A stretch of DNA of 64,000 nt from Chara braunii (Eukaryota; Plantae; Charophyceae). Where the stretch lies: contig BFEA01000039.1 of NCBI GenBank assembly GCA_003427395.1, positions 3,190,844 through 3,254,843 of the forward strand. Reading direction: 5' to 3'. Both the position numbers and the translations under genes were made by a program. The notes below the pieces were generated by a model. It was not told the DNA's origin, searched no databases, and saw only the letters and a list, made by a program, of their open reading frames with translations. Every line of letters starts with the position of its first letter. Positions within the stretch are counted from its first letter, which is position 1. This document shows positions 676 through 57,033 of this stretch, piece by piece.

Positions 676-1074
676 TCACTGAGCGTTGATTCAGTGTTTG
701 TGATGGTGAATTGATATGAACGAAGTCTTTCTGCAGGACATGTTGGGAGAGCTGCATTGAACATTTCACTGTGTCACTGTGAATCATTATGAATGAATCT
801 GTCATGAGGGTGAAAACAATATATGCAATGATGACATAGGTGGTGACGAGGACGATAATAATCATGACGGAACAAAGCTGAATCTCCTTGAGGATAGAAC
901 GAAATAGTCTTAACGATTGGTCCACGCTGTCAACACTGTAAATCGTCTCCACTTAATGCATGCAGGTGGTAGCTAAATCATCAACAACATGCATAAATTC
1001 ATCATTTTGAGGCAACGAAGTGGTGATGGTTGTGTTTGCCCTGTTGACATAATTTGTACCATGGATTGTGGCAG

Positions 1075-3501
1075 GGCAACGAGGTGCCGTCCGCAGTGGT
1101 GTTGGAACCTGAAGTCTATGCCTCAGAGTCGGAAGGGAGTGTTGAGGAAGAGAAACCTGAAGTGCAACTGTCATCTTCATCAACAGAGACAGGATTGCGA
1201 GACGAGGCACCGTCATTGCATGGACAGGATATTGCACTTCTGGACAGTAAACCAACTGCACAACTGGAATTCCTCTCTGTGCGAGGTCCTCAATCCCGTG
1301 TGGATGTCAAGGAAGGGGAGTCATTTCTTCCTGAACCAGGGTCTCGACCGATTGATGAAAGTGCATTTTGTGCGGACAAACCTGTTGGAGGTATTCACTC
1401 AGGAGAGCCAGAACCTGCTTCAACAATCTTTGATGCATCCGATGATGGAGAGAGCTGGTCTGTAGATTGTACACCTGCAGATCAGGTGCTAACGAGTACT
1501 ATGGAATCAAGTGAGGGTGTTCAGGAACAGGTCAGATCTCGATCGGCAGATCTTTTCTTGATACCAGAAAGTGGAAGGGCGGCAGAAACTACATTGGAGC
1601 ATGTGGAAGCTGCTGACAATATGGCTCCAATTGCATCTGCAGAAACGTGTTTGTTGGCGGCATCCGCTCCTCTGTTAGTCCGTGCTGAGGCATCTACTGA
1701 GCCACTTACAAATACAGCACCAGCTGTGGAGAGTGCGTTTGTGGAGGAGGTATCTGATCCAGGCCTTGAAATGCTTGTCTCACCAGATCTGATGGCGGCT
1801 GTGTCACAAGCAGAAGCTGCTGCGGGAGATATGGGCCATCCCATGGAGGAGCATGACAATATCTATGAAGGTGTTGGGGGTGATGCATTTTGGAGAGGCA
1901 CCGTGCCCACAGAGCTGAATTTGAGTGGTGAACCTGTCGCCCAGGTGATTGTGGGCTTGCCGGAAGCAGATATTGTCTCTGACGCAGATATGGTTTGTCC
2001 TGCGGAGGGTGCACCTTTTGTTGCTGTCGAGTCCTCAACTGGTGGTGTCCAGGCTGCCACTATGAAGGACCACATACTGGAGGAGCGGGCAATTGCAGAT
2101 GGTCTCGAAGTGGACATCTCTATGGAGCAGGTTGAAGCAGTTGTGGCCATCTATGAAAGGGAGGTGACCTCGATGAAGCACGAAGAGCGGAATGATGCTA
2201 TTGACGCAGCAGTTTCTGATGTGGGGAAATCCCTCCCGACCGACTCTGTTGCTGTTCGAGATGCATTTGCTAAACATGGGGAAGACCAGCGACCAGCTGC
2301 TGATTCTGACGTTTTGGCCAAGCCCGTTGGGCATGAACGTTTTCCATCAGAGCCCTCGATCCAGCCAGAAGTTTTGAGACATGGACTTGTGTACGAGAGC
2401 GAGGCCAAACTGGAACCTGGATTCCAAGAAGCGAAGTTGAGTGGAGGTTTGGAGGCCAAGGCAGAAGCCCCACAGGTGGAGGAATTGGAGGGCAAGATTT
2501 TGACTGAAAGTGGTGCAATTGCAGGGGACTCGGTATCTGCGGCGCCATTTGCAGTGAGGTACACGGATGCTGCTTTGGATGCAGACGCCATTGCAAATAT
2601 TGCTGCAGGATTTGAACAAACCAAGACGAGAGTTATGGAGTTAGATTTAGCCACTGCTGCGGAGCTGACCATGGAAGACACCAATGAAGCGTCCTTAGAG
2701 CCACCACAAAAGCTCTTAGATATGACCCCATTCGTCAAGTTGGATATGATTGTATCAGTAGAAGAGCCAGGTGCCAAAGCTCATGATACTGATGATATGG
2801 AGGCACAGCCTGTCACACTGGATGGATTGTTCATGGGATCATCACTAGGTGAGAAGCAGGAAGCAGTCCTACAGGAGGTTGTTGAATCCAAATCAGGTGT
2901 TCCGGAGATGGCTGGCATATCCATGGAAACAGATCCGCTTGTGCATTCAGCGACAGTTCTCGGCCAAGTGGAGGTTGCCGATGAGGAGGCTTCATCAACT
3001 GTCCAAGAGCTGTCACAAGAGGAGTGTGTCCTGGCCACTGATGCTCCGACGCCTTTGGCCCCTGCTCCCCTCCATCCGTCTGGGGAGCCAGTGGCTGTTA
3101 TTGCAGAGTCCCTGCATGTGCTAGAAGCTGGGGTTGCACCCTTGGCAGAGGAGGTGTCGCAACATGGGTGGCTTGAAGCGGGAATGGAGGCTGAACCTGC
3201 ATTGTCCGGTCTTGGTCCCATTATGATAGAGAAAGCTGCTCCAGTAATGGAAAGCTCTGTGGAAAGGGAATCCGTTGTTTTGGCTGATGGATCGGTGCAG
3301 CCTGGACAACTCGGCGGGTTATCTGAGGACACAGCTGAGGGAGCTGCTGAGCCGCCAAGGTCAGCTGTTGAGGACACTGCTATCAGTAGAAAGGCACTTG
3401 AGTCATCGTCTGAGCCTTCGCAAGTTGTGTCCTTCGCCGTTGCTTTAGTCGAGGTGGGACCGATTGTTGATGTGCCTCCCACAAGTACATGGATGAGCCA
3501 G
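1075..3501 (+). CDS. Exon 1: 809-codon acidic, low-complexity E/A/S/V/P-rich region
   Basis: Inside ORF 1054..3564; acceptor tggcag|GGC, donor CAG|gtatgt; phase 0/0. Confidence 0.8.
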
Positions 3502-6500
3502 GTATGTGCCACCATTTTTCCTTTCAACCTGGAAACCATGTATGGATATGAGAGCTTGATATAGTGGCATCCGATCAGGTCATTGTAGCCACAGTCGTCG
3601 GCACTCATGCAGAGTGCATTGCATCTCTGATTGTGGTCATACGTATTTTGATGGCTGTTTGAACATGTCATTGCCATCAACTGGATGTGATAGCATGGTA
3701 GTGGTTGTATGTGGGCAACGGTCAACAAGTACTTGACAGAATCAGCATGCGATGGCAAATACTGGAGGTTCTTGAGTGTGCTGTGTTGTCTATATCTGTG
3801 CCTTGGTGACTTGGTGGAAGAACCGCGCGTATAGCATGCAATGGCAAATACTGGAGGTTCTTGAGTGCGCTGCGTTGTCTATATCTGTACCTTGGTGACT
3901 TGGTGGAAGAACCGCGCGTATAATTTCTTTATGTTAATGAACGCGACTGCTTTATATAAACAACTATCCATGAATATAGCAAGGCTCGAAGAGCAGACAC
4001 TTCACGTCTGAATCCCATGCATTGGAGACAAAGGATGCCTTACATCCACTTCACATACGATTTTGAAATTGACATAATGTCATGATAATGATGATTTCTT
4101 TACCTTAATGAACTTGACCACTTTATAGAAACAAGTATCCATGAATATAATAAGGCTCGAAGAGCAGAGACTTCGCGTCTTAATCCCATGCATTGGAGAG
4201 AAGGATGCATTATTTGAAATTGACATAATGAAGACTTCAAAATTAACATATTTCTTGTTCGTCATGATGAATGGTCAGGGTGTTGAGTACGAGCCTGCAT
4301 CGACAATGCAAAGGGGCATGGCCTGGGCTCTACAAGATCCTCAGGACGAAGAAGCCAAGGAAGAAGATGCCAGGGCGGAAACCCTTGTTCAAGCAGATGT
4401 GGATGTGACAGCAGAATGGATGGCAAGCACAGTCCCAGAAACCAGCATGGTGCTTTCATCCAATCCTTTTGCTGAGATGGATGAGAACGAAGGAAGGGAA
4501 GACGAGGAGGAGAGGCAAGTGTATGAGTTGTACGACAAGCCCATATTATTGCCAGAGCCGGGTACCCTTCCAGCAGAGTTGGCTGTGCCCTTGCCAAAGG
4601 TTGCAGACTCCAGAGAATCAGGACAGCCTGCTGAGGATCTGCCGGTGTCTGTTGGTGTCCTTGAAGAGCATTTGATGGTGTTGTCCGAGCCAACAGTCAA
4701 AGTGAGACCTTCCATGGAAACCGCAATGGCACCAAGTATTGTGGTAGGGACGTCTGAGCCTCTGAAAGAACCTGCAGTGAATGTGATTACCGAGGGTTCT
4801 CCTGAGGAGAGCAGAAAGCCTCCCGATCTTTCACTGGGGAGGACTGGACGGGCAGAGGCTACAGAAGAACCTACTGTGGTCTCCATGACTGTGTCTGAGA
4901 AGGAAAGTACCCTTGAGCCCGGCGTGCCTTCGCTAGTAGAGGCTGTCACTATTGGCGCTGCTGAGCCTGCGGTTGAGGTGGAAAGCGCCTCTGGAGCAGA
5001 CGCAAATGTTGAGGAGGATGATCTAACAAGAGTCGTAAAGCCTGCTCCTGCACCTGGAGTGACAGACGAAGCGGAAGTGGCTGTTGCTGCAGCAAGTATG
5101 ATCGAAGAGAAATTGGCAACTCCAAAGCTTATTTCGCAGTTGCAGAAACCATGGCAGTCTGCGGAACAACTTGAACCAGTTGCAGGGGTCGGTGAATATG
5201 GTAGGTACTCTAGCGCAGCATTTGATCCCTTGCCAGCGGATGGGCAGGAGACTGAAATGGTGGCATTGGAGGAGCTGCTTCCTGGAAAAGAATATCTCTA
5301 TGAAGGCAAGATCGAGCCTGGGGACATCAAACAGGGTTTCCTTGGCGACTGCTGGTTCCTTTCTGCTATTGCTGCTCTTGCGGAGTTTCCTGGGTTGGTG
5401 GAGAACGTGTTCCTGCATAGGGAGGTACCCAAAGATGGTGTATACAAGCTTCGTTTCTTCAAAAGTGGGAGGTAGGTGGTAGGTGCCCTATTATCTTTCC
5501 ATGTTTGGAGGGACTGTCTGTTTTCTTTCAACATCCAAGTTACGTTGCTTGCTGGGATGCGCTGTCGGCGCAGCAGCGCTCTTCACTTGTTGTTGCAGAT
5601 TGCGTGTGTTTCCCCTTTTCTTAGTGATCTCCTCCTCAACCAAGTTCCTTGTCTCTTTGTGAGTCTTTGCTGTTATGGATTCTTGACAGGTTTGGTCATC
5701 GAGTTGAGTAGAAGGGACGTTATGAGAGAGTGCTTCTTGTTGTATTGGATCACAAACTCTCTCTTTTTTCAAAGCTTATCCATGGCAGAGTGCTTGCTTT
5801 GTGTCGTATTGAATCCCAAACTCTCTCCTTTTTGAAGCTTATCCTCAGCTTGATTGCTGTTATGCTGTTTTGTAGGTGGGTCTCCGTGGCAGTCAATAGC
5901 AATGTCCCAAGCAAGGAGGGACAACCCATATATGGTGAGTGTAAACATTTTTGTGTGATAGCTGTTGATTTGTATCATTCGTGTTGAATGTTGAACATAC
6001 GAGAGGCCAGGATCTTTAAAAGAAAAAAATGATTAGACAGTTACCTTACCAGGTTTACTATGAATGATAACTTTTTTTTTTCCCTTCATTCTTGACATGG
6101 CCTCGGATCCATTCTATTCTTGGCAGCAGCAGTCCAGTTCCTTGTCCGACAGAAGTCGGAAGTTTACAAAAATATACACCCTTACTCATGGTCGGCTTAT
6201 GGCTGGGAACCTCGGACAACATCGTGTGCCCACAGAAAGAGAGGGGGGGGGGGGGGAGACTGGCTGATGGATACACCCATGTGGATTTGAAGGTCCCCTC
6301 CTGTCTAAGCTTCTCACCTGCCCAAAGAAAAATGCTTGGAGCTGCAGAATGGAGAGCTGCTCCTCTCGGCGTTCTATTGCAGGCTGTTTGGAAATCCTGT
6401 GAGAAACTAAAACACTCTCTGTAATTTTGGATACAATTTGAGAATTCTACAGCTAAATTCCAATTTGTTGAACCCTTCTGAAAAAACTTCAAAAAACTGG

Positions 6501-7945
6501 TTATAGTCAAAATACAAAATTGTTATTTCAAAGTTGTGCTTCACAATTTAAACCTAAAAACCCCTTGTCAAGTGATGTTTCTCCGTTTCGAAGTATTACT
6601 TGCGGGCGTTGATGCTATAATTTTGCTCTGTTCGAGTCTTCAAACAATTCTTACTGTGTCTTGTTGTGTAATCTGGTTGGCTTCCTGTTCTCAGCAAAGT
6701 CGGTTGGAAATGAGATGTGGGTGATGCTGTTGGAAAAAGCGTATGCAAAATTGCACGGGTCCTACAAGCAATTGGTTCTTGGCAATCCAAATGATGCTCT
6801 GCAAGACCTAACTGGCGCACCATGCTTATGGTATAAATTTGACACGGAGAAATTCAAGAAGCTTGAAGAAACAACTGGTACGTCCTGGGGTTCTTCAGTA
6901 ATGCCTCATGGTTTCTGCTCCTTTGAAGTGTGGGTTGGACCTTGTTGCAGTGGTGGCAGGCTGTCCATAGGAACAGGGGAGCTATAGACCTTAATAAAAA
7001 TGTTTTACACGGTTGAAAGCTGAAACATGTTTGGAAGATCTTCCTTCTCCTTGGCGTCTTCCCCCACCCTCCCCAGCCCGTCCTTTTTCCCTCTCCGTGG
7101 CTTTCGTGCAGCTATTTCCTTCTCGCCGCCCTCGCCCTTGCCCCCCCCTCCCACTTCCCGCCACCCACCCATGTTCCACCTGTAGCCTTGGTATCTTGTT
7201 TCAAATGTTCTTAGGCTCAATGCTTGATAAGTGGGGCAAAAACATCATCGATAAATGTTCCAGTGGACCAATGTCGATCAAATGGTTTCATAATATCATA
7301 TCTTGCAGATGTTTCTTGGACTGTGTTCAATGTTTGAAAAAAATCAAATGGTTTCATAATATCATATCTTGCATATGTTTCTTGGATTGTGTTCAATGTT
7401 TGAAAAATATGGTAAAAAAAAAGGATTGCGGAACGATTGTGTAATCACTCCAGGGGAGAGAACACCTAGGATTGCTACTGGCTAGTTAGTGGGTCTAGGC
7501 GGGGGCGGTGAATGGATTTGGGGGACCTTAGAAAATGTATCTTTGAAGATCTGAGTATTAGCTACAGCTTGTATTTATTAGTCATTTCATTTCAGTTGAA
7601 TAACTTGAATTCTTGGACCTTTCTTAACATGGAGCCTTTGTCCGTTTGCGGATACCTTTATCTGTGCAAACTTGCAAAGCTTTGGGGAATAGTTGGCAAT
7701 CCTGTTTTTTCTTTTTTGGGGGGGGGGTTAACCTCTGGTGGGGTTAGGAAGTGGTATTCATGGCCGTGTCAGTCCAAGGGGCGATGGGTATGATGTGGTT
7801 GGGGGGAGGAAAAGGGAGAGGGGGAAACGAGGAACAGATTGCACAGTGGAACGTGGAGATTGAGAGAGTGTGACACAACTATTTTACTTCAGGTGTAGTG
7901 GGAGAAAGGGTGGGAATTCGTTTCTGTTTGAGTGTGTGTGCGTGT

Positions 7946-8013
<68 letters not shown>

Positions 8014-14000: not shown

Positions 14001-14736
14001 TCTGATAACTTGGTGTTTCCTGTGCTCTGCTTGAATCGCTGCAACAACAGTCATACATGTGTGTGTAATGTCCCACCGATCTGTCAGTGGTAGGGCCTCA
14101 TGCCACTACTCACCAAAACGTGAAATGGTGAGTGTGCCATGCACAAGAACATAGCTAGATATATGTGCCATTTTGTCATTTGGCGACTGGTCCATCAGAT
14201 CAGGTTGTGGTTGAAGAAAAAATATATTTTCTTTTTTTCTAGGCTGGGCCACCGCCCGGACGGTTGGGCCCGGGGGGGTCCGCCCGGCGAAACCGGGCGA
14301 TGCAAAAACCCAGCAAGAAATTTTTTTATTAGTTTTGGAAGGTGGGGTTGTGCTGCGCTACCCTAGAGGACCCTGAATCTGCAATAAAAAAGGTGAGCGC
14401 GTCTGGAGAGCGGGGGGGAAAGAGTCGGGGAGCAAGGAGCACAAGGGGCATGACGGAGGCACGTGGGGGCGACCAGCGATTGGGCGCGATCCTGACGATT
14501 CGGGAGGGAGGGGAATGGGGCTTGAGACGGGTGTGAAGAAGAAGCGAAGAAGAAGAAGAAGAAGAAGAAGAAGAAGAAGAACAAGTGAAGAAGAAGAGGA
14601 AGAAAAAGCGACAACGAAGAAGAAGAAGGAGAAGAAGAAGAAGAAGAAGAAGTGATGATGAAGAAGATGAAGAAGAGAAGTGAAGAAGAAGAGGAGGAGA
14701 AGGGACGACAAAGAAGAAGTGATGATGAAAAAGAAG

Positions 14737-14796
<60 letters not shown>

Positions 14797-17700: not shown

Positions 17701-17949
17701 GGTCTTAATTTGTTTGGGACCATTTCCATAATTTGGATGGTTCATGTTTGGCAGGTTTCTGGAGTCTTCTGCAGCAATATGTCAAGGAGGGTTATGTACT
17801 TGCTGGCTGCACATCAAGCGACTCTGATTCCTCCAGCCCTGCAAAAAGGACGAATGGACTTGTCAACGGGCATGCATACGCCATCCTGGAGGTAGGTTTC
17901 AAGCACTCACATATGCGGATGGATCTTTATTTCTCCACCCCGTGTTCCG

Positions 17950-18031
<82 letters not shown>

Positions 18032-19184: not shown

Positions 19185-19256
<72 letters not shown>

Positions 19257-49200: not shown

Positions 49201-52200
49201 TAATATTAAGACGAGCATTAAGTTTCAACAACGCCGGATCTCTGGGATGAAAATATTGAATCGACAACTTTTGGAACAGATTGACGCAGTGGACTCCGGA
49301 GGTTGTTCTCCTTCAGCACCCTCCCTTTGAAGCAACAGAGTTTTCCTTAGCTGGCAAAGATAATTCGAAGAAAATAACTTTTGTTCGGGTTCGGAACCAG
49401 AGTTCGTCGAAATTTTCTTCGAATTATCTTTGCCAGCTAAGGAAAACTCTGTTCTTCGATAATAGTTGATATTGCAATGAAAATGAAAACTGCTAACAGA
49501 GTTTTCCTTAGCTGGCAAAGAGAATTCGAAGAAAATTTTGGATTCCTTTTGTTCGGAACCAGAGTCGGTAATACATTTTACAACTTTTACTGAAACTCCC
49601 ATATTTACCATCTCTGTGAAATTGTGTGAATGGCTCTCATACGTGTGTACTATGTAGTCATTCAAAACAAGTGTGGTCTTTCAGGGGGTGCGAAATTGTG
49701 AATGCCTTTTTTTTTTTTTTTTTTTTTTTCCAACAGTATCAGTGCCATTTCATGTTTGTTTAACTCTGCTCTTTTTGGCACTGTTGCTTGTGTTTGTCAT
49801 GACGTCTCTTCGATGCTCAGGTTGGTCCAGATAGCAGTCGACACGAAGGTTCCTGCCAAGGATTTCCGGCCGGTTTATGGTAAGTATGCCCAGGTCCGGG
49901 AGCAGCTGAATCCCGAAACTCTCTCTATCTATTATTTCTGTTTCCGTTTTGTGGTTGCTAATTTTAGGTTCCTTCCTCAATCTTCCTTCTTTTTTTTTAA
50001 TCCCTTTTAAGACGGCAAGCCTGGCTCAATTGGTACACCCGTGAACTGGACTGCTGTAACACAGACCTGATTCGAACTCCCATAGAATTTCGATCAGTAG
50101 AAATTAACGCTGAATTTACATGAGGACGGACAGTTCAAAGATGATCTCTTGAGGACATTGCCCCCTTATTTAAAATAAGGGAAGTGAGGGGAAGGAAGAG
50201 ACGAAGAAGGAAGCTACGCTACCAACCTGGAAAAGAATGATGGTGTTAACTTGTGAACAAAAAAAAAAGAACTGGACAACTCCACCTCCGGGACAAAGTG
50301 GAAGTCTTTGCCAAATTTAAAATATGAAATTGATTTTTTTTTTAATTCAGTTTTGGAACGGCCGGGCAATTGCTCCTGGGCCACTCCGGTAATGTAGGAA
50401 GGAAGAGAAAAAAAAAAAAGAAAAAAAAAAAGAAAGAAAAAGAGTGCCAGCCTCAAGAATTCATTGTGGAAGGTGCCGCTTGGTCTGTTTATGGTTAGTA
50501 TATGCCGATGTGTGGGAGCAGCTGAATCCCCGGAACTCTCTTCTCTATTTATTCTTTTTTTTTCCCCCTTCTGCAGTCGCTTTACGTCTCTTTCTCACAG
50601 CCACGTCTTGTTGCTGTTTTGCTGTTTTAGATCGTCAGCTGATGGAAGATAAATTGTTTTTCGTTTTTCAATTCTTTTGGTGTTTATGCAGCTTACTCGT
50701 CAGCAAACGAACTCTGGGTGATGTTGATGGAGAAGGCTTATGCTAAGCTGCATGGATCATATGAAGCTCTTATTGGAGGATCTCCCAGTGATGTGCTGCA
50801 AGACCTTACAGGAGCCCCGTGCATAACATATGCCTTCACGAGCACAAAATTCCAACGATTTGAGTCAACAGGAGGTTAGTTACATTCACTATCATCCGGA
50901 AACACTTTCCTCCGGTGGCATATTTGAAGACTAGGAGCCTGGCTTCACACTCGCCCTGACCGCTAGTAACCTTTGCGTTCACACTCGCCCAGACCCCGAG
51001 GGACTCGTGCCTCCATGCTTGCCCTGCCCACTGATCTGGTCATAACTTTGTCATGTGCTCGCTGATGACCTGACCTCCATTGAGTCCATTCATTTCACAC
51101 AGGAAAAAATACCAAAAGCACAGATGCTAAATAGGATGGCGCAGCATGAACTGAACTCCATGTATGGGAGGAGGGGCATGGGAATGTAGTCATTGCACAG
51201 ATTGCCCAGCAGCAACCCTAACCAGCCTTACCAAGTCAACAGCCAAGATAAGAGATGTATATGAAAAGATGCAAGGCGCAACTCCGTCTCCTGACGTCAT
51301 CTTTCATTTTCGGATGATTTTCCCCATTTTTTTTATGTCTGTGTAATGGACATCTTCTGTTTTGGCCCATGCTTGCTTCTTTTGCGACTCTACCTTCGAC
51401 TCTCTCTGGAGTAGTCTTCCATCTTAGGTAAGTTGACTTCTGCCCTCCATCCCCTTATGGGGTTTGAAATATATATGATGTCGATTAGGAATTCCTTGCA
51501 AGTTTTTCACTCCTCGAATACAATGGTATTTTTTACCAGCAGGCAAATCTTTGACTCTACCTACCTCCTCGAACCATAACAATAGAGTGCTCTTGTAAAT
51601 TATGGCCTTCTCCTGGAATGTATGCAATAATATACATATGTATAAGTGCAAGTGTGCCACTTTGGCGGCAGACGGGTGTGTGGGCATTCGGCGCTGAACC
51701 ACACAAACGTGGCCAACCCTTTTTTTTTTTTTTTTTTTTTCCTATTATATGGCTTATCTATACTTTTTCGTTAAGGGATGGCTTGTGATGATTTGTGAAG
51801 GGAATGAAAGAGAGAATCTGGGGTCTTTTAAAACAACGGACAGGTTGGTTTAGTATTCAAAATTACAAGAAAGAGTATATGATAGCTATAACACCATCCA
51901 AGCAAATTAGTAAAGATTGGAAAGTCTTGCCACACACTGAAGCTCCGTTCTCTGGCCTCGTCGTGATTGTTAATTAGCATGAAGCTCTTTGTCGTCTGTC
52001 CCTCAGCATGAAGCTCTTTGTCATCTGTCCCTCTCTCTCACATAGACCTGGGGGAGATCTGGAGGAGAGAATTAGATAGTGGATTGGACATGAAGGTGAG
52101 AGGTATGACCTTGCTGTATTTGGAGTCGATGTTCCTACAGTATTAGAAGATTGTGGTATGTAAAACCATGAGACTTGAAGTCCGACGGTCCAATATTAGA

Positions 52201-53473
52201 TTAAAGCCCCTAGGCGGGACTCTTATCTCTATGTCGGTAGAATGAAATCTGCGCAAGTGTGGAAGCAGTGTTCCTGCCACTGGGTGGGATTGTTATTCTA
52301 AGTATTGATATTGATCTATGTGGCCCTACTTCCCCTTCCATTGTTTGTTTGGGTTCCGCTATTGAATGCAGGATTCTGGACTTTGTTGAAGGGATATTGC
52401 GACAGGGGTTTCATTTTGACAGCATGTGCTGCCGGGGCAGATGAGTGTGAGGAGAATGGAGTGAAGAGGGAGGGAGCCCTAGTGAATTCACATGCATTTG
52501 CCGTCACATCGGTGAGTCCGTTTTTCAGAACAACGTGCTTGTTCTCCTTTTTTTTTCTCACTTTTCTTCCAAAGACATTAGGTACCCCTTAATCTGATTG
52601 TATCCGTCTGAATTTGGGCTCGTTGTCAGTTATACAATAGTAACCATTCAGCGAAAGGGCCGGTACAGGGACCAGTGTACATTTCCTTTTCAAATTCCTT
52701 TCTAGACGGCTTTGAGATATTATCATTGAACTGGCGGGCCCCAGGTAAGCCACAACTATTATATTCTGTTCTTCTGATTCTGATTGCATCTGGATTCGAA
52801 CTTGGGTCCGTGTTTCAACAGCTGACGGGTGTACGAACTGAGCTAGGCCCTTCGGTAAGACAAATGTAGTGTGTAGTATGAACCTTATTCGGGACAAAAA
52901 ATTAAAAACACAATTTGCCTTTTATTGTGAGAGAGCGTCAGCACAATGAAGCTGAATGCAACCACTTCTTTCCTTAGTTTTCAACTTCTTTGTAACTTTT
53001 TAGTATTTACCAATTGTTCTTCCGGTTCTCCTCGCTCTGTCGCAAGTGGATGTTGCATTTTAAAACTTCTGTGTGTGTTTGCTTCGTTTGCACAGAACGT
53101 CATCTGCAAAGCAGATGGTGTCACAATCTCAGGTTCGCTGTGTAAGGGTTCTGGTCCTGGCCGTTTCTGTTGGAACAGGCCCAAGTGATAAAGTGATGCT
53201 GCCACTTTTCAGTGTTTAGATTAACCCCTCCCAAACTGAACAGACAAACTGAAAAACCCACCCAGACTCCCAGAGTGAGTTTTGTAAGAGAATGGTTTTG
53301 CTGCAGTTTTTGCCTGGCAGTGTGCTGTGTGTGAACTCGGGCTTTTTTTGGTTCGGAACTTTGGGTCATATGTAGTTTCGGTTTCGTTATGGACCTAGCA
53401 GAAGACTTTTGAAAGTAGGGGCTCTTTTGCAGCGGTAATGTCAGTCTGATTTGGTGGAGGGAAAAAGAGACAC

Positions 53474-53519
<46 letters not shown>

Positions 53520-54410
53520 TGTATGAGAAAGAATTCCGTGAGGGAAATGGCATAATTTTGGGTCTGAACCTGTGCTTTCGGCTGGATGATTCTTGCAGCT
53601 GAGGGAACTTGAAAGAGGAGTGCACCGCTTGCTGCATGTGAGGGACCCAAGGAACAGCTTCAAATGGACTGGTGCCTGGTCACATAGAAGTGCAAACTGG
53701 ACAAAATATCCACATGTCACTAAGGAAATCAAACCGATACTTGATGGGTCGGATCATGGTTTCTGGATCTCCTATGAGGATCTTCTAAAGGTGAGTTGGC
53801 TTCTTCTTTTTGTATCTTTGTGTGCATTGGAATTGTGTGTGTCCATCTGTGTGCATTGGAATTTGAATTGCAAGCACTGTTACCAGACCTTTTGCAAATC
53901 GTCACGGCTTCTTCATTCTTACCACGCCTTGACAGATCGTCAGGACATGGACGCGTATAAGTATGGTTCCAGTTTTGATTCATTGTTATGGATAAGGGAG
54001 GAATGAAAAAGTTGGCTCTCTGGTTGAAGAGGAGCAAGATTGTTGGAACAAGATTGCTGCCTCTGCGGATTGGGAAGGAGGTGGGACCATGAGGCCCTGT
54101 TTTCGGAAAAGGGAAAGAGAAGAGAGAACAGAGTGATATGCTTACTGACAAAACAAATTTGAGTAGTTGGTTGTCTGAAAATTGGTCGGTACTATAAACC
54201 TTGGTGCTCCTTTGTGACTGCACATGGAGTGTTGGTCAGTGCTATAGACCTCGGTCCTCCTTTGCAACTGCGCATGGAGTCAAACTGGTGTCCTTGGTCA
54301 TAAAAACCAAGCATCGTAACCACTGCCACCATGACACGGTGTACAAAAGCCGAACCAAACAGGTTATGATATTCCCCCCAGCCTTCCATGGCCGCAGTGT
54401 CATTACCATG

Positions 54411-54452
<42 letters not shown>

Positions 54453-57033
54453 TGCGCTCAACCACAATCAACGTGCCGAGCCTTGTACATGAGAGGTACA
54501 GTAAAAGGCGAGTTGCAAGAACAAATGAAAGGGGTACCCAAAATGGCAAAGTGAACACAGTTAAGAAAGGGATTTGAATGCGTCTATTGTGCCCCGTGTT
54601 GCTTTGCTATAGAACCATTTTATTGTCGGATTGTCTCAACGGTAGTGTTTTTGTTGTCCGCTATAGGACTAAAGCTGCTTCGATTTTGGATCTGGGTGAA
54701 ATAGAGAGGCTGTTGTGGTGAAAACTCAAAACACAAAACACTGCCACCCAGGGACTCGTCGCACACTTGCTCCAAGCATATGACCCTCAACCACGAGGGC
54801 ACCCAGCCCCTATCGACAGTATCCACAACTTAACAAGGGGGGCTTGAACCCCAACGGCCACCGCATTCCTGGTACTCCTCCACGCTGGTTAGTGGGCTCG
54901 AGCACTGGTCAGTCGGCCGATTGTAACTGCTTTGATGCCGAAATGAAATCTGACGTATGGACTAATGGGTGTGGTTTGGTTCCGCCGTTGTTGTCGTCAT
55001 GCAGAACTTTATTGGAATGACGGTCTGCTGCGTAAAGAGAGATGGAACAAAGCCATGGAAGGAGTTTCACATCCCTTGCAGTTTCGTTGTAACTGCTTTG
55101 ATGCCGAAATGAAATCTGACGTATGGACTAATGGGTGTGGTTTGGGTCCGCCTTTGTTGTCGTCATGCAGAACTTTATTGGAATGACGGTCTGCTGCGTA
55201 AAGAGAGATGGAACAAAGCCATGGAAGGAGTTTCACATCCCTTGCAGTTTCATTGCAGACGACTGGTCGTCAGGAAACAATCCTTCTCAGCCAACCAGGA
55301 TATTCCGTCTGAAGATCACTGAGCCAACCAGAGTTTTTGTCGGTCTTCATCAGGAGGATCCGCGACTGTAAGTGCACCATCTTCAGGCTCCCCTCCCCCC
55401 CAACCCCTCCAGCCGCTACAGTGCCGTTCCTGAAACTTCTATCCCCTGTGTGTGTGCTCTCCCTCTAGTGCGCCATCCTCCACTCTCTTCTCTCACTGCA
55501 GATGATTAGTCGCGATAACAGCAACAAACGAGAGGTTAGCCAATTGTCAAACATGCATCATGTGAGAACCAAGAAAGAAGAAAAAGACACACAGAGTAGA
55601 CAAGGATATAATAGTAAATCCTGAGTGCAACTCTACTTGGTTAATGAGCACCTGCTGTCCCATCCTCTCCCTTTCACCTCACTGGAGTATCCTCTCTACT
55701 CTCTCCCTCTTGTCTGCGGTCCCCCTCTACTTCAGTGTCCTCTGCTCTCCTTCCAATCGTCTTTCCACCGTCTATTTCGAGGTTTCTTCCCTGAGGCACA
55801 CAGGGGAGAACCTCTAAACTGCCCACTGGTCTGTTATTCTTTCTTCACTTGCCTCCCAACACATACAAGTGTTATTTTGTGAGATAAGCAAACAATTGAC
55901 CCATCATGTTCTCTAGATAAACAGAAAAAAATACTGGAAAACCCAAATTGACATAAAGTATCATTAAGTTATGGTTTTCCAAGGATATCCTTCCTACTCC
56001 CCAAAAGCATCATTGGAAATCTCAAATATGTTGTTAAATTTATAATTCATAATCTTGTATTTGTATTTGTCAATTTTGTCTCCTCCCCGATGTATTTGTA
56101 TTTGTGTCCTTCCCGACAGTCGGAATCGTAGTTAGCACGAGTAAGCTTCTGACCCCGCCATGCTCCTACTTCTCTCCGATTCATTAAGTGATGGTTTTTC
56201 ACTTTAAGACCCGAGAAGGCTGAGTTGTTGTTGTTGACGGACAAGCGTGTGTTTTCCTTGTTATGGTGGGGGTTTTATTGTCCTATGGCAGGTTGGGTGT
56301 CCCTGAACCACTGAAGGTTGGACTTTGGATAATGGACAAGCAGAACCAATTTGTGACAAGTAAGCAGACGCCGGAGGTGGTCTGCCAGTTGGAGACGATC
56401 TTGCAGCCAGGGCAATACAGAGTGATGACGAAGGCGTTCTCGTACACGAACGGGAAGGGAGAATTGGTGAAGTTCCCAGATGTGACTGGGACTGCGTTGC
56501 CGCGGCGTTTCACGCTCATCGTGCACTCAGACAGGCAGGTGGGAGCACACCTGATGCTAGCGCCAAAGTCGTCGACGAAGTCGTGGAAGGAGTTGCACAC
56601 TCATTGCAGCTTTGTGGCGGACGACTGGTCAGCACTCGGCAATCCGCGGCAGCCGACAAGAATGTTCCGCGTCAAAGTTACGGAGCCCACACGCATCATC
56701 GTCGGGATCGATCAGGAGGACCCGCAGAACCTAAGGGTTCAACAACCTTTCAAAGTTGGTGTTTGGGTAATGGACAAGCAAAGCCAGTTCCTGGCAATGA
56801 AACAGAGTTATGAATCTTACTGCCAAGTGGAGGTCACGCTTCAGCCGGGATTCTACAGGATCATGGTGAAGGCTTTCTCGTATATGACAGCGAATGGCAT
56901 CTGCAAGTTCCCTGACCCTACGGGCTCTATCCTGCCACGGCCTTTCATTCTTTCAGTCCTTTCAGAAAAGCATGTCGATGTCTTCCTGATGACCAGCGCC
57001 CGTGCTGCCAAGCTCTTAACTTCTGTCTATTGA
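1075..57033 (+). CDS. Giant multi-exon tandem calpain gene: acidic N-terminal region, 5 x (CysPc + C2L/domain III), extra C-terminal C2L; >=4728 aa, probably 5'-incomplete
   Basis: 32 GT-AG exons with compatible phases sum to 14,187 nt (divisible by 3) and end in TGA at 57031-57033. Calpain motifs (QGxLxD[C]WxL, [12 protein letters not shown], DLTGxP, [H]AY, R[N]PWG, WxGAWS, FW) recur five times. Confidence 0.9.
3744..4232. repeat. Two local duplications in intron 1 (89-bp unit x2; ~140-160-bp diverged unit x2)
   Basis: 3744..3832 vs 3833..3921; ~3922..4080 vs ~4094..4232. Confidence 0.8.
4279..5471 (+). CDS. Exon 2: acidic linker + CysPc1 N-terminal part with catalytic Cys ([16 protein letters not shown] 5350-5352)
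   Basis: ORF 4141..5475; acceptor ggtcag|GGT, donor AG|gtaggt. Confidence 0.92.
5876..5934 (+). CDS. Exon 3 (CysPc1, [19 protein letters not shown])
   Basis: 59-nt exon, tgtag| ... |gtgagt; same length in all five modules. Confidence 0.88.
6695..6877 (+). CDS. Exon 4 (CysPc1, [18 protein letters not shown]...DLTGAP)
   Basis: 183 nt, ctcag| ... |gtacgt. Confidence 0.92.
7945..8011. repeat. (AC)n(AG)n compound microsatellite
   Basis: Direct reading. Confidence 0.95.
8262..8401 (+). CDS. Exon 5 (CysPc1, catalytic His in [11 protein letters not shown] 8381-8383)
   Basis: 140 nt, tgcag| ... |gtgagt. Confidence 0.92.
9118..9303 (+). CDS. Exon 6 (CysPc1, catalytic Asn in RNPWG, AAT 9157-9159; EWGGAWSD; DGSFW)
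   Basis: 186 nt, gagcag| ... |gtaggc. Confidence 0.92.
9633..9860 (+). pseudogene. Decayed duplicate of the exon 6 3' part and adjacent intron
   Basis: CCCGAGGTCAAGGCTGATTTGAATCCAGTGCTAGAT is identical to exon 6; the flanks have indels and stops. Confidence 0.85.
10402..10598 (+). CDS. Exon 7 (C2L-1 first half, ending LHQEDPR)
   Basis: 197 nt, catcag| ... |gtaagg. Confidence 0.88.
11949..13331 (+). CDS. Exon 8: C2L-1 second half + linker + CysPc2 N-terminal part ([10 protein letters not shown]; Cys->Ser at 13210-13212)
   Basis: ORF 11926..13335; gtcag| ... AG|gtaatg. Confidence 0.92.
13707..13765 (+). CDS. Exon 9 (CysPc2, [19 protein letters not shown])
   Basis: 59 nt, tgcag| ... |gtgcgt. 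Confidence 0.88.
14240..15417. mobile_element. Non-autonomous TIR DNA element (hAT-like) with internal (AAG)n and (CT)n tracts
   Basis: Ends TAGGCTGGGCC...GGACCAGCCTA; GC-rich subterminal CCCGG repeats; no clear TSD. Confidence 0.65.
16167..16790 (-). mobile_element. tRNA-derived SINE with poly(A) tail and 14-bp TSD
   Basis: Minus-strand head with A box TAGCTCAGTTGG and B box GGTTCAATCC (16717..16788); poly(T) 16166..16182; TSD TCTTTGAGCAATCT at 16153..16166 and 16791..16804. Confidence 0.85.
16188..16337. mobile_element. 150-bp MITE nested in the SINE tail
   Basis: Perfect 13-bp TIR ACCACCAGTACTT/AAGTACTGGTGGT flanked by TTAA on both sides. Confidence 0.75.
17262..17447 (+). CDS. Exon 10 (CysPc2, [18 protein letters not shown])
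   Basis: 186 nt, tgcag| ... |gtgagt. Confidence 0.9.
17755..17891 (+). CDS. Exon 11 (CysPc2, GLVNGHAY; His retained)
   Basis: 137 nt, ggcag| ... |gtaggt. Confidence 0.9.
17955..18024. repeat. (CT)n microsatellite
   Basis: Direct reading. Confidence 0.95.
18442..18607 (+). pseudogene. rps4: NUMT: mitochondrial rps4 fragment
   Basis: AT-rich; [18 protein letters not shown]...[22 protein letters not shown] resembles plant mitochondrial RPS4 (from memory). Confidence 0.7.
18607..18887 (-). pseudogene. nad7: NUMT: mitochondrial nad7 fragment with a 31-bp frameshifting insertion (18696..18726)
   Basis: [19 protein letters not shown]...[16 protein letters not shown] / [29 protein letters not shown]. 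Confidence 0.92.
19009..19459. mobile_element. Short TIR element (hAT-like MITE) enclosing the U2 fragment
   Basis: Perfect 11-bp TIR TAGGCTACCAG/CTGGTAGCCTA, GC-rich subtermini, AT-rich core. Confidence 0.7.
19186..19332 (-). pseudogene. U2: 3'-truncated U2 snRNA retrocopy with a 70-nt poly(A)
   Basis: Minus strand reads TCGGCCTTTTGGCTAAGATCAAGTGTAGTATCTGTTCTGATCAGTTTAATATCTGAT..., then A70 (T-run 19186..19255); no Sm site or 3' half. Confidence 0.9.
19995..20180 (+). CDS. Exon 12 (CysPc2, QDPFG; Asn->Asp)
   Basis: 186 nt, tccag| ... |gtgagt. Confidence 0.9.
20542..20738 (+). CDS. Exon 13 (C2L-2 first half)
   Basis: 197 nt, cgcag| ... |gtaagt. Confidence 0.88.
20794..21194 (-). mobile_element. 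tRNA-derived SINE, older copy
   Basis: Head CCAGCGGCCTAGCTCAGTTGG... like the 16788 copy; T-rich tail near 20794; degenerate TSD ACTTCGCACCAATT/ACTTTGCACAAATT. Confidence 0.7.
21215..21550. repeat. Compound tandem repeat (TGTGACCTATCCAAGGGGCTGCCATGCTCGAAC-like subunits within larger units)
   Basis: Three larger units; ORFs show repeated [12 protein letters not shown]. Confidence 0.85.
22636..23994 (+). CDS. Exon 14: C2L-2 second half + linker + CysPc3 N-terminal part ([10 protein letters not shown]; Cys->Gly at 23870-23872)
   Basis: ORF 22391..23998; cacag| ... AG|gtaaac. Confidence 0.92.
24616..24674 (+). CDS. Exon 15 (CysPc3, [19 protein letters not shown])
   Basis: 59 nt, tgcag| ... |gtatgt. 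Confidence 0.88.
25441..25623 (+). CDS. Exon 16 (CysPc3, [17 protein letters not shown])
   Basis: 183 nt, tgcag| ... |gtaagt. Confidence 0.9.
25686..25785 (-). mobile_element. Isolated LINE 3'-end fragment
   Basis: AAAACAGG.CCTTATG...CCATTCTGGGG..CGTCAGTCCGGTTCCT matches 26085..26160. Confidence 0.7.
26038..31973 (-). mobile_element. Decayed L1/Tx1-like non-LTR retrotransposon with poly(A) and 18-bp TSD
   Basis: TSD CAGTAGGACCGTGTTTCT at 26020..26037 and 31974..31991; poly(T) 26038..26080; RT motifs [43 protein letters not shown]; C-terminal CxxC...HCLLFCP finger; stops and frameshifts. Confidence 0.9.
28180..29545. mobile_element. Non-autonomous hAT-type element nested in the LINE
   Basis: 8-bp TSD GTCCAAGG at 28172..28179 and 29546..29553; TIRs CAAGGTTGCAC / GTGCAACACTG; subterminal CCGAC repeats; internal tandem duplications 28510..28975. 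Confidence 0.88.
32289..32410 (+). CDS. Exon 17 (CysPc3, LVNTQAY; His->Gln)
   Basis: 122 nt, tgtag| ... |gtgggt; starts GFW like its paralogous exons. Confidence 0.85.
32774..32959 (+). CDS. Exon 18 (CysPc3, QYSLG; Asn->Tyr; EWNGAWS)
   Basis: 186 nt, gagcag| ... |gtgaga. Confidence 0.9.
34879..35120 (+). repeat. Duplicate of the exon 18 donor and first ~210 nt of intron 18
   Basis: AGGTGAGATTTGCATCCGACCTTGCTGATTGC at 32958 and 34879. Confidence 0.85.
35173..35369 (+). CDS. Exon 19 (C2L-3 first half)
   Basis: 197 nt, tgcag| ... |gtaagt. Confidence 0.88.
35838..37184 (+). CDS. Exon 20: C2L-3 second half + linker + CysPc4 N-terminal part ([10 protein letters not shown]; Cys->Gly at 37063-37065)
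   Basis: ORF 35824..37188; tgcag| ... CG|gtaagt. Confidence 0.92.
37865..37923 (+). CDS. Exon 21 (CysPc4, [19 protein letters not shown])
   Basis: 59 nt, tgcag| ... |gtaagt. Confidence 0.88.
38075..38295 (+). pseudogene. sdh4: NUMT: mitochondrial sdh3 3' end followed by sdh4 5' part (ATG 38187; 7-bp duplication frameshift)
   Basis: [20 protein letters not shown] (SDH3-like), then [24 protein letters not shown] (SDH4-like). Confidence 0.8.
38436..38989. repeat. 277-bp tandem duplication of unidentified sequence
   Basis: AGTGGCCCCCTTTCACGACAGG at 38436 and 38713; few mismatches. Confidence 0.9.
39808..39990 (+). CDS. Exon 22 (CysPc4, [17 protein letters not shown])
   Basis: 183 nt, ctcag| ... 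|gtatgt. Confidence 0.9.
41150..41381. repeat. 34-bp minisatellite, about 6-7 units
   Basis: Unit AGAGGTAGTGCCACATCAGCATGCAATGTAGACC, head to tail. Confidence 0.92.
42545..42675 (+). CDS. Exon 23 (CysPc4, GLLNTCAY; His->Cys)
   Basis: 131 nt, tgcag| ... |gtaagt. Confidence 0.87.
43296..43481 (+). CDS. Exon 24 (CysPc4, RNTWG; Asn retained)
   Basis: 186 nt, gagcag| ... |gtatgc. Confidence 0.9.
43772..43968 (+). CDS. Exon 25 (C2L-4 first half)
   Basis: 197 nt, ggcag| ... |gtaagt. Confidence 0.88.
44090..45720 (-). mobile_element. Highly decayed LINE remnants with a ~170-bp internal tandem duplication
   Basis: Minus-strand [12 protein letters not shown] parallels [12 protein letters not shown] of the 26-32 kb LINE; T-rich end near 44095; duplication 44390..44733. 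Confidence 0.55.
46433..48364 (+). CDS. Exon 26: C2L-4 second half + long acidic linker + CysPc5 N-terminal part ([10 protein letters not shown]; Cys->Leu at 48243-48245)
   Basis: ORF 46407..48377; cacag| ... AG|gtacgg. Confidence 0.92.
49334..49540. repeat. ~42-bp unit as an inverted pair plus a third direct copy
   Basis: AACAGAGTTTTCCTTAGCTGGCAAAGATAATTCGAAGAAAAT, its reverse complement at ~49412..49453, and again at ~49495. Confidence 0.85.
49821..49879 (+). CDS. Exon 27 (CysPc5, [19 protein letters not shown])
   Basis: 59 nt, ctcag| ... |gtaagt. Confidence 0.88.
50018..50080 (+). mobile_element. Degenerate tRNA-like SINE head
   Basis: TGGCTCAATTGG ... GATTCGAACTC; similar to the reverse complement of 52793..52852. 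Confidence 0.5.
50692..50874 (+). CDS. Exon 28 (CysPc5, [18 protein letters not shown])
   Basis: 183 nt, tgcag| ... |gttagt; translated by hand (not in the ORF track). Confidence 0.9.
52372..52511 (+). CDS. Exon 29 (CysPc5, LVNSHAF; His retained)
   Basis: 140 nt, tgcag| ... |gtgagt. Confidence 0.88.
52793..52852 (-). mobile_element. tRNA-like SINE head
   Basis: Minus strand TAGCTCAGTTCG ... AGTTCGAATCC. Confidence 0.55.
53599..53790 (+). CDS. Exon 30 (CysPc5, RDPRN; Asn->Asp)
   Basis: 192 nt, tgcag| ... |gtgagt. Confidence 0.88.
54920..55251 (+). repeat. 166-bp tandem duplication of the exon 31 acceptor and the first ~80 coding nt
   Basis: GTCATGCAG|AACTTTATTGG at 55005 and 55171; two mismatches in the intron part. 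Confidence 0.92.
55171..55367 (+). CDS. Exon 31 (C2L-5 first half)
   Basis: 197 nt, tgcag| ... |gtaagt. Confidence 0.88.
56292..57033 (+). CDS. Exon 32 (last coding exon): C2L-5 second half + complete intronless sixth C2L + stop
   Basis: ORF 56263..57033; ggcag|; second [37 protein letters not shown] copy. Confidence 0.92.

What the first reader, a model, noticed from the sequence alone, without database searches (positions are those of the whole stretch)
1075..57033. Giant poly-calpain: five CysPc-C2L modules plus a sixth C2L in one >=4,728-aa polypeptide
Seen: 32 exons join in one open frame, with no stop between modules. The large exons (8, 14, 20, 26) each run from one module's C2L through a linker into the next CysPc, so this is one protein and not a cluster of tandem genes. 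Known: classical calpains and the land-plant calpain DEK1 carry a single CysPc. I do not recall a five-module calpain in streptophytes. Inference: an undescribed beads-on-a-string calpain architecture.
Basis: partly seen in the sequence, partly recalled or inferred. Interest (0 to 1): 0.95.

Follow-up and report, generated by a model that had tools for sequence, protein, structure and literature searches.

The report
Giant five-module charophyte calpain gene
One expressed gene of a stonewort-type (Chara-like) green alga encodes a roughly half-megadalton protein made of five calpain protease units in a row, only the first of which keeps its catalytic residues; three-unit giants of this kind are already known from Leishmania, so this is an unusual new variant and not a wholly new kind of protein.

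Summary
On the + strand, 31 exons from 4129 to the stop at 57031-57033 join into 3,979 codons with no internal stop. All introns are GT-AG, and intron phases repeat module by module. An upstream acidic exon (about 1054-3501) brings the protein to roughly 4,650-4,800 aa. Pfam finds Peptidase_C2 (CysPc) in all five modules. The domain after each CysPc gets no Calpain_III hit but folds as calpain domain III. Spliced transcript contigs from three independent studies carry the M1-to-M2 inter-module junction (10598->11949), and their lengths fit one mRNA running to the 3' end. Modules 2-5 read S-H-D, G-Q-Y, G-C-N and L-H-D, yet they are kept under purifying selection against a deeply diverged Chara braunii paralog that shares module 5's dead site. 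The novelty claim is only partly right. Zhao et al. 2012 list Leishmania major proteins of 4,553 and 6,164 aa with CysPc-C2L x3, and fragments of this family are deposited as C. braunii hypothetical proteins. I found no description in streptophytes. Verdict: a real, expressed, new variant of a known kind.

The parts
1054..3501 (+). Exon 1 (provisional): acidic, disordered N-terminal region. The true start may lie in an upstream exon.
   Evidence: 836-codon open frame with no Pfam hit. Strong donor CAG|GTATGT at 3501. Composition A/E/V/S-rich, pI 4.1. RNA contig X2 rec7 extends about 1.6 kb of transcript upstream of the position equivalent to 4129. The junction itself was not seen.
4129..5471 (+). 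Exon 2: acidic pre-domain region and the start of CysPc 1, with the intact catalytic Cys (GDCWFLS). The acceptor is ambiguous, between 4129 and 4477.
   Evidence: PF00648 E 4.9e-12 at its end; active-site alignment; acceptor candidates.
5876..5934 (+). Exon 3, CysPc 1
   Evidence: Conserved 59-nt exon in all modules, phases 2/1.
6695..6877 (+). Exon 4, CysPc 1
   Evidence: PF00648 E 5e-15.
8262..8401 (+). Exon 5, CysPc 1, catalytic His present (NGHAYT)
   Evidence: PF00648; alignment; RNA joint 8401->9118.
9118..9303 (+). Exon 6, CysPc 1, catalytic Asn present (RNPWG)
   Evidence: PF00648 E 3.6e-16; alignment; RNA joint 9303->10402.
10402..10598 (+). Exon 7: first half of C2L-like domain 1
   Evidence: Alignments A4/A5; RNA joint 10598->11949 in three studies and one raw read.
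11949..13331 (+). Exon 8 (fused): second half of C2L-like 1, a 258-aa acidic linker, and the start of CysPc 2 (Cys replaced by Ser, EDSW)
   Evidence: Open frame; PF00648 E 5.6e-10; covered end to end by RNA contigs of 10.2-10.4 kb.
13707..20738 (+). Exons 9-13 (13707-13765, 17262-17447, 17755-17891, 19995-20180, 20542-20738): the rest of CysPc 2 (His kept, Asn replaced by Asp) and the first half of C2L-like 2
   Evidence: PF00648 in three pieces; RNA joint 13331->13707; splice model.
22636..23994 (+). Exon 14 (fused): second half of C2L-like 2, linker, and the start of CysPc 3 (Cys replaced by Gly, DDGW)
24616..35369 (+). Exons 15-19 (24616-24674, 25453-25623, 32289-32410, 32774-32959, 35173-35369): the rest of CysPc 3 (His replaced by Gln, Asn by Tyr) and the first half of C2L-like 3. 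Includes a 6.7-kb intron.
   Evidence: PF00648.
35838..37184 (+). Exon 20 (fused): second half of C2L-like 3, linker, and the start of CysPc 4 (Cys replaced by Gly, EDGW)
37865..43968 (+). Exons 21-25 (37865-37923, 39754-39990, 42545-42675, 43296-43481, 43772-43968): the rest of CysPc 4 (His replaced by Cys, Asn kept) and the first half of C2L-like 4
   Evidence: PF00648.
46433..48364 (+). Exon 26 (fused): second half of C2L-like 4, a 441-aa linker, and the start of CysPc 5 (Cys replaced by Leu, ADLW)
   Evidence: The homologous exon is one open 603-codon frame in C. braunii L001.
49821..55367 (+). Exons 27-31 (49821-49879, 50704-50874, 52372-52511, 53599-53790, 55171-55367): the rest of CysPc 5 (His kept, Asn replaced by Asp) and the first half of C2L-like 5
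   Evidence: PF00648; 67-82% identical to C. braunii L001 exons, with pN 0.11-0.21 against pS about 0.8.
56292..57033 (+). Exon 32: second half of C2L-like 5, a complete intron-less sixth C2L-like domain (56539-57030), and the stop at 57031-57033
   Evidence: AF2 pLDDT 81.6. Best structural matches are calpain domain III.
57034..57326 (+). Inferred 3' UTR, about 210-290 nt
   Evidence: Contig lengths minus the spliced distance to the stop. An inference; no reads were laid here.

Best explanation
This is a single expressed gene of a charophycean alga (Chara or a close relative). It encodes a non-classical, apparently cytosolic calpain of about 4,650-4,800 aa (about 0.5 MDa). The layout is an acidic disordered N-terminal region, then five CysPc plus C2L-like modules separated by 250-440-aa acidic E/P/V/A-rich disordered linkers, then one extra C2L-like domain. 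The array arose by internal tandem duplication of a six-exon unit. The duplication boundary falls in an intron inside the C2L-like domain, so each large exon fuses the end of one module to the start of the next. Only module 1 keeps the Cys-His-Asn triad and is the likely protease. Modules 2-5 have lost the nucleophile but keep the calpain fold under purifying selection. They most likely act as non-catalytic binding or scaffolding (pseudoprotease) modules that position or regulate the single active head, as proposed for CAPN6 and the kinetoplastid calpain-like cytoskeletal proteins. Shown here: the gene structure, expression across the M1/M2 boundary, the state of the catalytic residues, the fold, and conservation. 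Inferred: a continuous mRNA over M2-M5, the 5' end, activity of M1, and the scaffolding role.
Against: Only one of the four inter-module junctions was seen directly in RNA. The others rest on contig length, which is an inference. Contigs cannot show transcript starts or ends, so internal promoters or shorter isoforms are not excluded. The start codon and the exon 1/exon 2 junction were not observed. Pfam Calpain_III and a PDB sequence profile do not recognise the C2L-like domain, and two non-calpain jelly-roll domains tie with calpain on Z. No protein-level or activity data exist. A Cys-to-Ser module with His and Asp (M2) might retain some chemistry. The scaffolding role is an analogy, not a test.
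Confidence: 0.8

Rival explanations
1. A tandem array of five separate calpain genes that the reader joined by mistake. Each gene would have its own start inside a large exon and its own end after its C2L-like domain.
For: Tandem paralogs are common, and each large ORF contains ATG codons. Multi-CysPc gene models in databases, such as the Globodera protein P0007, may be annotation fusions.
Against: The C2L-like domain is split by a phase-2 intron, and its second half runs without a stop into the next linker and CysPc in all four cases. Spliced RNA contigs cross the M1/M2 boundary and continue for more than 8.6 kb. The fused exon is also open in a paralog with saturated synonymous divergence.
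Confidence: 0.03
2. It is one gene, but modules 2-5 are decaying duplication debris with no function of their own. Only the N-terminal active calpain matters.
For: Four of the five modules lack the catalytic Cys, and His or Asn is lost in various combinations. The linkers diverge fast, at 22-30% identity.
Against: No stop or frameshift occurs in about 3,000 codons of dead modules. For module 5 and the C2L-like domains, pN is 0.11-0.22 against pS of about 0.78 versus C. braunii L001, and the dead site L-H-D is shared. The dead module is predicted to fold confidently as a calpain core plus domain III.
Confidence: 0.07
3. The locus also produces shorter isoforms, through internal promoters, alternative polyadenylation or retained introns. 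The giant protein would then be only one of several products, possibly a minor one.
For: Contigs cannot show starts or ends. Intron 9304-10401 carries separately assembled low-depth contigs, and in the oligo-dT run it has more reads than the flanking exons. A 166-bp duplication offers a second acceptor for exon 31.
Against: Contig depth is even (50-75) across exon 8 and its junctions in three studies, and no pile-up of molecule ends was reported (table 6). Raw-read depth was too low to be decisive.
Confidence: 0.2
4. Some 'dead' modules are catalytically active through non-canonical residues (M2 has Ser-His-Asp, M4 has a Cys at the His position), making this a true poly-protease.
For: M2 formally carries a Ser-His-Asp set. 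Reviews note that triad substitutions do not always abolish activity (PMC7912814).
Against: From general knowledge, Cys-to-Ser calpains are the standard inactive controls. M3 (G-Q-Y) and M5 (L-H-D) have no plausible nucleophile at that position.
Confidence: 0.05

Closest known systems
Leishmania major giant calpain-like proteins Q4FYS2 (XP_848004, 6,164 aa) and Q4FYS3 (XP_848003, 4,553 aa); kinetoplastid 'group 4' calpains
   Same: Several CysPc-C2L modules in one multi-thousand-residue polypeptide, with an incomplete catalytic triad (listed as 'C,N') (PMC3563603 Additional file 1; PMC7912814).
   Different: They have three modules, not five plus an extra C2L, and come from excavate parasites, not a streptophyte. 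Here the modules form a clade of their own, so an independent internal duplication is likely.
Chara braunii hypothetical proteins GBG63455.1/GBG63456.1 (CBR_g38075) and GBG83417.1 (CBR_g37131), and the 8,938-residue gene model next to the latter
   Same: Same family. These are the only proteins among 1.84 billion representatives that match the domain-half plus linker plus CysPc profile. They show the same inter-module junction, the same C-terminus and the same dead site in the M5-type module.
   Different: They are 56-82% identical with saturated synonymous sites, so they are paralogs or distant orthologs. The deposited models are fragments: a transposon SH3 domain sits at the N-terminus of P0001/P0151, and the gene is split by a DUF659 (hAT-type) insertion in L002. 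They are unnamed and undescribed. Their sixth C2L-like domain still has the intron that this gene lacks.
Classical calpain large subunit (m-calpain, PDB 1KFU/1DF0/3BOW), domains II-III
   Same: Each module has a CysPc core followed by a beta-sandwich in the domain III position (TMq 0.65-0.70 over both domains). M1 has the Cys-His-Asn triad and the QGxLGDCW motif.
   Different: No penta-EF-hand domain and no Pfam Calpain_III hit. Five modules in one chain, four of them without the nucleophile.
DEK1, the membrane-anchored calpain of streptophytes (TML-CysPc-C2L)
   Same: Found in the same broad lineage, with CysPc followed by C2L and about 39-40% identity in CysPc.
   Different: No transmembrane region is seen here. 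These CysPc group with protist-type cytosolic calpains, separated from DEK1 by a 98/97 split. DEK1 has a single active CysPc.
CAPN6 and other catalytically inactive calpains (Rhodnius Calpain A/B2, trypanosomatid CAP5.5-type proteins)
   Same: The calpain fold is kept after loss of catalytic residues, with proposed non-proteolytic, often cytoskeletal roles (PMC3731218, PMC11387712, PMC7912814).
   Different: Those are single-module proteins. Here four dead modules are covalently linked to one live module.

Membership tests
Calpain superfamily (MEROPS C2, Pfam PF00648 Peptidase_C2 / CysPc) | CysPc domain recognised by the family profile | tested here: met
   All five modules give collinear PF00648 hits exon by exon, with E from 1e-7 to 4e-16. 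Most pieces score above the 23.8-bit gathering cut-off. The C. braunii relative P0151 gives E 4e-62 over profile positions 22-296.
Calpain superfamily (active enzymes) | Catalytic triad Cys-His-Asn | tested here: inconclusive
   Met in module 1 (C-H-N). Not met in modules 2-5 (S-H-D, G-Q-Y, G-C-N, L-H-D). The protein as a whole has one canonical site.
CysPc-C2L calpains (Zhao et al. type 3 and derivatives) | C2L/CBSW (domain III) beta-sandwich directly after CysPc, recognised by sequence profile (Pfam PF01067) | tested here: not met
   No PF01067 hit even for the contiguous sixth copy at E<=1. The PDB sequence profile finds nothing.
CysPc-C2L calpains | Domain III fold in the domain III position | tested here: met
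Multi-module (CysPc-C2L)n giant calpains (kinetoplastid group 4) | Two or more CysPc-C2L units in one polypeptide | tested here: met
   One open frame through five units. RNA crosses the M1/M2 boundary, and contig lengths fit the rest.
Multi-module (CysPc-C2L)n giant calpains (kinetoplastid group 4) | Common descent with the kinetoplastid proteins | not tested
The Chara-type modules are monophyletic with 100/100 support, which favours an independent duplication.
Classical calpains | C-terminal penta-EF-hand domain | tested here: not met
   No EF-hand Pfam hit in any exon or in the terminal ORF.
DEK1 / membrane-anchored calpains | Multi-spanning membrane domain N-terminal to CysPc, and CysPc grouping with DEK1 | tested here: not met
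   The N-terminal exon is acidic and disordered, not hydrophobic. The tree separates these CysPc from DEK1 (98/97). An upstream exon outside the window cannot be excluded.
Calpains (general) | Ca2+-dependent activation | not testable with these tools
   The only hint is that the Asp nine residues before the catalytic position (Asp106 of calpain-1, Ca site 1, from general knowledge) is present in M1-M4 and is His in M5.

The most novel reading that the evidence does not exclude
Charophycean algae carry a conserved, lineage-specific family of half-megadalton or larger calpains. In these, one live protease head is permanently tethered through long acidic disordered springs to four or more conserved pseudoprotease modules. 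The whole acts as a giant multivalent scaffold, for example on the cytoskeleton or cortex of the giant internodal cells. The architecture evolved independently of the kinetoplastid giants, and this protein holds the largest number of CysPc domains found in a protein supported by transcripts.
Probability: 0.3. Interest if true: 0.7.

Novelty: new variant of a known kind. Interest (0 to 1): 0.55.

Why it matters
Land plants are described as having a single calpain, DEK1, with cytosolic calpains thought to have been lost on the way from charophytes (PMC10762896). This gene shows what one of those charophyte cytosolic calpains looks like: a transcript-supported five-module giant with one live and four conserved dead protease domains. 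It is a natural, tractable case for asking what pseudoprotease calpain modules do, a question still open for CAPN6 and the many inactive trypanosomatid calpains. It is probably also a second, independent origin of the (CysPc-C2L)n architecture. On the practical side, current Chara braunii annotation breaks this family into unnamed fragments, so gene counts and domain surveys for charophyte calpains are off.

Tried and rejected
- **Pfam Calpain_III:** no hit on either half of the post-CysPc domain or on the contiguous sixth copy. A PDB sequence-profile search with alignment A5 also found nothing. The C2L label therefore rests on fold.
- **The search for homologous proteins with the 656-aa exon 26:** blank. 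This is uninformative, because of the length window and the low-complexity linker words.
- **The look-up of encoding contigs for P0001:** not on record. P0151 and P0002 worked.
- **The search of earlier findings:** the words 'calpain' and 'CysPc', and a sequence look-up, returned nothing.
- **Pfam on ten intronic, antisense and flanking ORFs:** no credible family, so the window offered no evidence of another gene.
- **The 8,938-residue C. braunii model next to P0002:** could not be retrieved, because no contiguous reference is long enough for the length window. Its module count is unknown.
- **Tandem-gene and pseudogene readings:** considered and rejected (see the rival explanations).
- **The joined spliced protein:** All such calls used single exons by reference or the contiguous C. 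braunii proteins. Exons were joined only inside scripts, to check frame, lengths and composition and to build the tree.
Full report
**What is in the sequence**

A protein-level self-comparison of the + strand shows five paralogous modules, each with the same series of conserved coding blocks. Pfam finds the calpain catalytic domain (PF00648, CysPc) in every module. The hits are split collinearly over the end of a large exon (profile positions about 31-100) and over small exons (122-178, 177-226, 229-288). I enumerated splice sites that keep the frame. Every junction type has the same intron phase in all five modules (2,1,1,0,0,2), all sites are GT-AG with good consensus, and exon sizes repeat: 59; 171-237; 122-140; 186-192; 197 nt. 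Joined inside a script, the 31 exons from 4129 to 57033 give 3,979 codons with no internal stop.

**The domain after each CysPc is one unit split by the inter-module intron**

The last exon contains a contiguous sixth copy (56539-57030). Chara braunii proteins P0001 and P0002 also read straight through the position where the other five copies have the phase-2 intron. A tandem-gene reading would need a stop codon after each domain, and there is none.

**Is that domain a C2L?**

Sequence profiles say no. There is no Pfam Calpain_III hit even at E<=1, and a profile search of PDB finds nothing.

Structure says yes:
- An AlphaFold model of 56539-57030 (pLDDT 81.6) has its best TM-scores on m-calpain domain III (TMq 0.55-0.59) and on the calpain-7 C2-like domain (TMt 0.61).
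- A full module taken from the contiguous C. braunii protein (P0151:780-1235, pLDDT 85.9) superposes on whole m-calpain over 460-509 columns at TMq 0.65-0.70. Core-only calpain structures reach only about 0.50.

The beta-sandwich therefore sits where domain III sits, and I call it C2L-like.

**Expression as one transcript**

I laid one raw oligo-dT RNA-seq run and the contig sets of three other studies on 8200-14000. All three contig sets carry the junctions 8401->9118, 9303->10402, 10598->11949 (the M1-to-M2 inter-module junction, also seen in one raw read) and 13331->13707, exactly as modelled.

The contigs that cross the boundary are 10,220, 10,316 and 10,397 nt long. The spliced distance from their first base to the stop is 9,979 nt for the contig starting at 10452 and 10,104 nt for the two starting at 9229. 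That leaves 212-293 nt, a plausible 3' UTR. This is an inference, but it fits three times, and it implies that these contigs run through modules 2-5 to the end of the gene.

An upstream contig ends at 9251, overlapping the next contig by 23 nt, which is an assembly break. It reaches about 1.6 kb of transcript beyond the position equivalent to 4129, so it extends into the acidic upstream ORF.

The limits are these. Contigs cannot show transcript ends. Raw-read depth was low. The tool allowed only one call, so the other three inter-module junctions were not seen directly.

**The 5' end**

ORF 1054-3564 is an 836-codon open frame with no Pfam family. It is acidic and A/E/V/S-rich (pI 4.1). It has a strong donor at 3501, but the acceptor (4129-4477) is ambiguous. 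About 149 open codons lie upstream of that ATG, which suggests a further 5' exon.

| Module | Cys position | His position | Asn position |
|---|---|---|---|
| M1 | C (GDCWFLS) | H | N |
| M2 | S | H | D |
| M3 | G | Q | Y |
| M4 | G | C | N |
| M5 | L | H | D |

These states come from the active-site alignments. M1's active-site stretch is about 60% identical to canonical calpains.

**Relatives, origin and selection**

A profile of the five large exons, searched against 1.84 billion representatives, found only two proteins that match the domain-half plus linker plus CysPc arrangement. Both are Chara braunii hypothetical proteins. Everything else matches only the generic CysPc N-terminus. A second search in the 715-2,275-aa range found nothing closer than protist single-CysPc calpains and DEK1 at 35-42% identity.

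I fetched the two C. braunii loci and mapped this window's exons onto them:
- L001 carries an M4-type domain half, an M5-type fused exon that is one open 603-codon frame, the M5 CysPc exons and the terminal domains.
- L002 carries the 3' end. An M5e5-type exon closes a gene model of 8,938 residues, a transposase-like gene lies on the other strand, and P0002 follows as the split-off terminus.

Against L001, synonymous sites are saturated (pS about 0.78) while pN is 0.11-0.22 in domain exons. The linker is at pN 0.45 against pS 0.74. The M5 dead site (Leu, His, Asp) is identical in the two genes.

A maximum-likelihood tree of 31 CysPc cores puts the five modules and the C. braunii module in one clade (100/100). 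M1 branches first, M5 pairs with the C. braunii module (100/99), and M2 groups with M3 and M4 (96/89). The clade lies among protist-type cytosolic calpains and apart from DEK1 (98/97) (outgroups were a hand-picked subset of the hits).

The array therefore arose by internal duplication. It lost its nucleophile in the non-first modules before the Chara paralogs diverged, and it has been maintained since.

The window shares scattered repeats with the C. braunii loci at 80-95% identity, while the homologous exons are about 70% identical. The source is therefore Chara or a very close relative, and the loci are old paralogs.

**How it probably works**

The linkers are 247-441 aa long, E/P/V/A-rich, with pI 4.2-5.0 and 2-4% aromatic residues, which is typical of disordered spacers. 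My best reading is a flexible beads-on-a-string protein. It has one Ca2+-regulated protease head (M1, inferred active) and four conserved pseudoprotease CysPc/C2L-like modules that bind partners or substrates without cutting them. Known inactive calpains offer the analogy: CAPN6, insect Calpain A/B2 and trypanosomatid cytoskeletal calpain-like proteins. This role is inferred, not shown.

**Comparison with what is known**

Zhao et al. 2012 (PMC3563603) list multi-CysPc architectures. In Additional file 1, Leishmania major Q4FYS2 (6,164 aa) and Q4FYS3 (4,553 aa) appear as CysPc-C2L-CysPc-C2L-CysPc-C2L with only 'C,N' conserved. Chlamydomonas and Volvox have CysPc-CysPc proteins. A review describes kinetoplastid group 4 calpains as enriched in CysPc repeats (PMC7912814).

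What I did not find described is:
- a five-module version,
- any such protein in streptophytes,
- the pattern of one live and four dead modules with evidence of conservation.

Searches for calpain together with Chara or charophyte returned only DEK1-centred papers. One of them states that charophytes kept cytosolic calpains that land plants lost (PMC10762896).

**Verdict**

The feature is real and expressed. It is a new variant of a known kind and is of moderate interest. I add that the intron is present at the same position in the C. braunii paralogs, so it was probably lost here.

The joined spliced protein was not sent to any search, family or fold tool. Those steps were done exon by exon by reference, or on contiguous C. 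braunii proteins.

Noticed in passing
window 9304-10401 (intron between exons 6 and 7): This intron has its own low-depth contigs (9314-9724 and 9702-10326, depth 5-15 against 50-75 on exons). In the oligo-dT raw run it has more reads (first mate on the - strand, depth 3-6) than the flanking exons, with loose ends at 10232, 10274 and 10302. It could be a retained intron or a separate polyadenylated + strand transcript. A 38-bp tandem repeat lies at 9453-9617.
   Followed up: no
window 54920-55255: A 166-bp tandem duplication (2.0 copies, 97% identical) copies the acceptor and the first ~85 nt of exon 31. Using the upstream copy would add 166 nt and shift the frame. The contig lengths fit use of the downstream acceptor.
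   Followed up: partly
window 43061-43295: A 113-bp tandem duplication (90% identical) ends exactly at the acceptor of exon 24 (43296).
   Followed up: no
window 56539-57030 versus L002 11389-11856 / 12671-12973: The sixth C2L-like domain has no intron here. In the C. braunii paralog it is interrupted at the same position as the inter-module intron of the other five copies, so the intron was probably lost in this gene.
   Followed up: yes
L002 1-1196 and 2434-7310 (C. braunii BFEA01000438.1): A deposited gene model of 8,938 residues ends with an M5e5-type calpain exon. A DUF659 (hAT-type) gene lies on the opposite strand between it and P0002. The C. braunii homolog may be even larger than this gene and appears to have been split by annotation.
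   Followed up: partly
L001 33136-33582 (C. braunii BFEA01000039.1): A piece homologous to the first 148 aa of the terminal exon lies between the M5e4- and M5e5-type exons, out of order. The N-terminus of P0001/P0151 carries a Tf2-1 SH3 (retrotransposon) Pfam hit. The cause is probably a mis-assembly or a mis-modelled gene.
   Followed up: no
window 18119-19537, 28180-28335, 40837-41897 and others: Interspersed repeats are shared with the C. braunii loci at 80-95% identity, in scattered and non-collinear positions and in both orientations. These are shared transposon families, which point to Chara or a very close relative as the source.
   Followed up: partly
window 11949-20180 (module 2): Module 2 carries Ser-His-Asp at the three catalytic positions, which is formally a serine-protease-like set on a papain-like fold. 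It is probably inactive, but worth an assay.
   Followed up: no
window 14535-14738 and 17895-18038: Two simple repeats lie in introns: a (GAA)n microsatellite, and a CT-rich run just after the exon 11 donor that reads as 'SLSLSL' in one frame and lengthened the raw ORF there.
   Followed up: no
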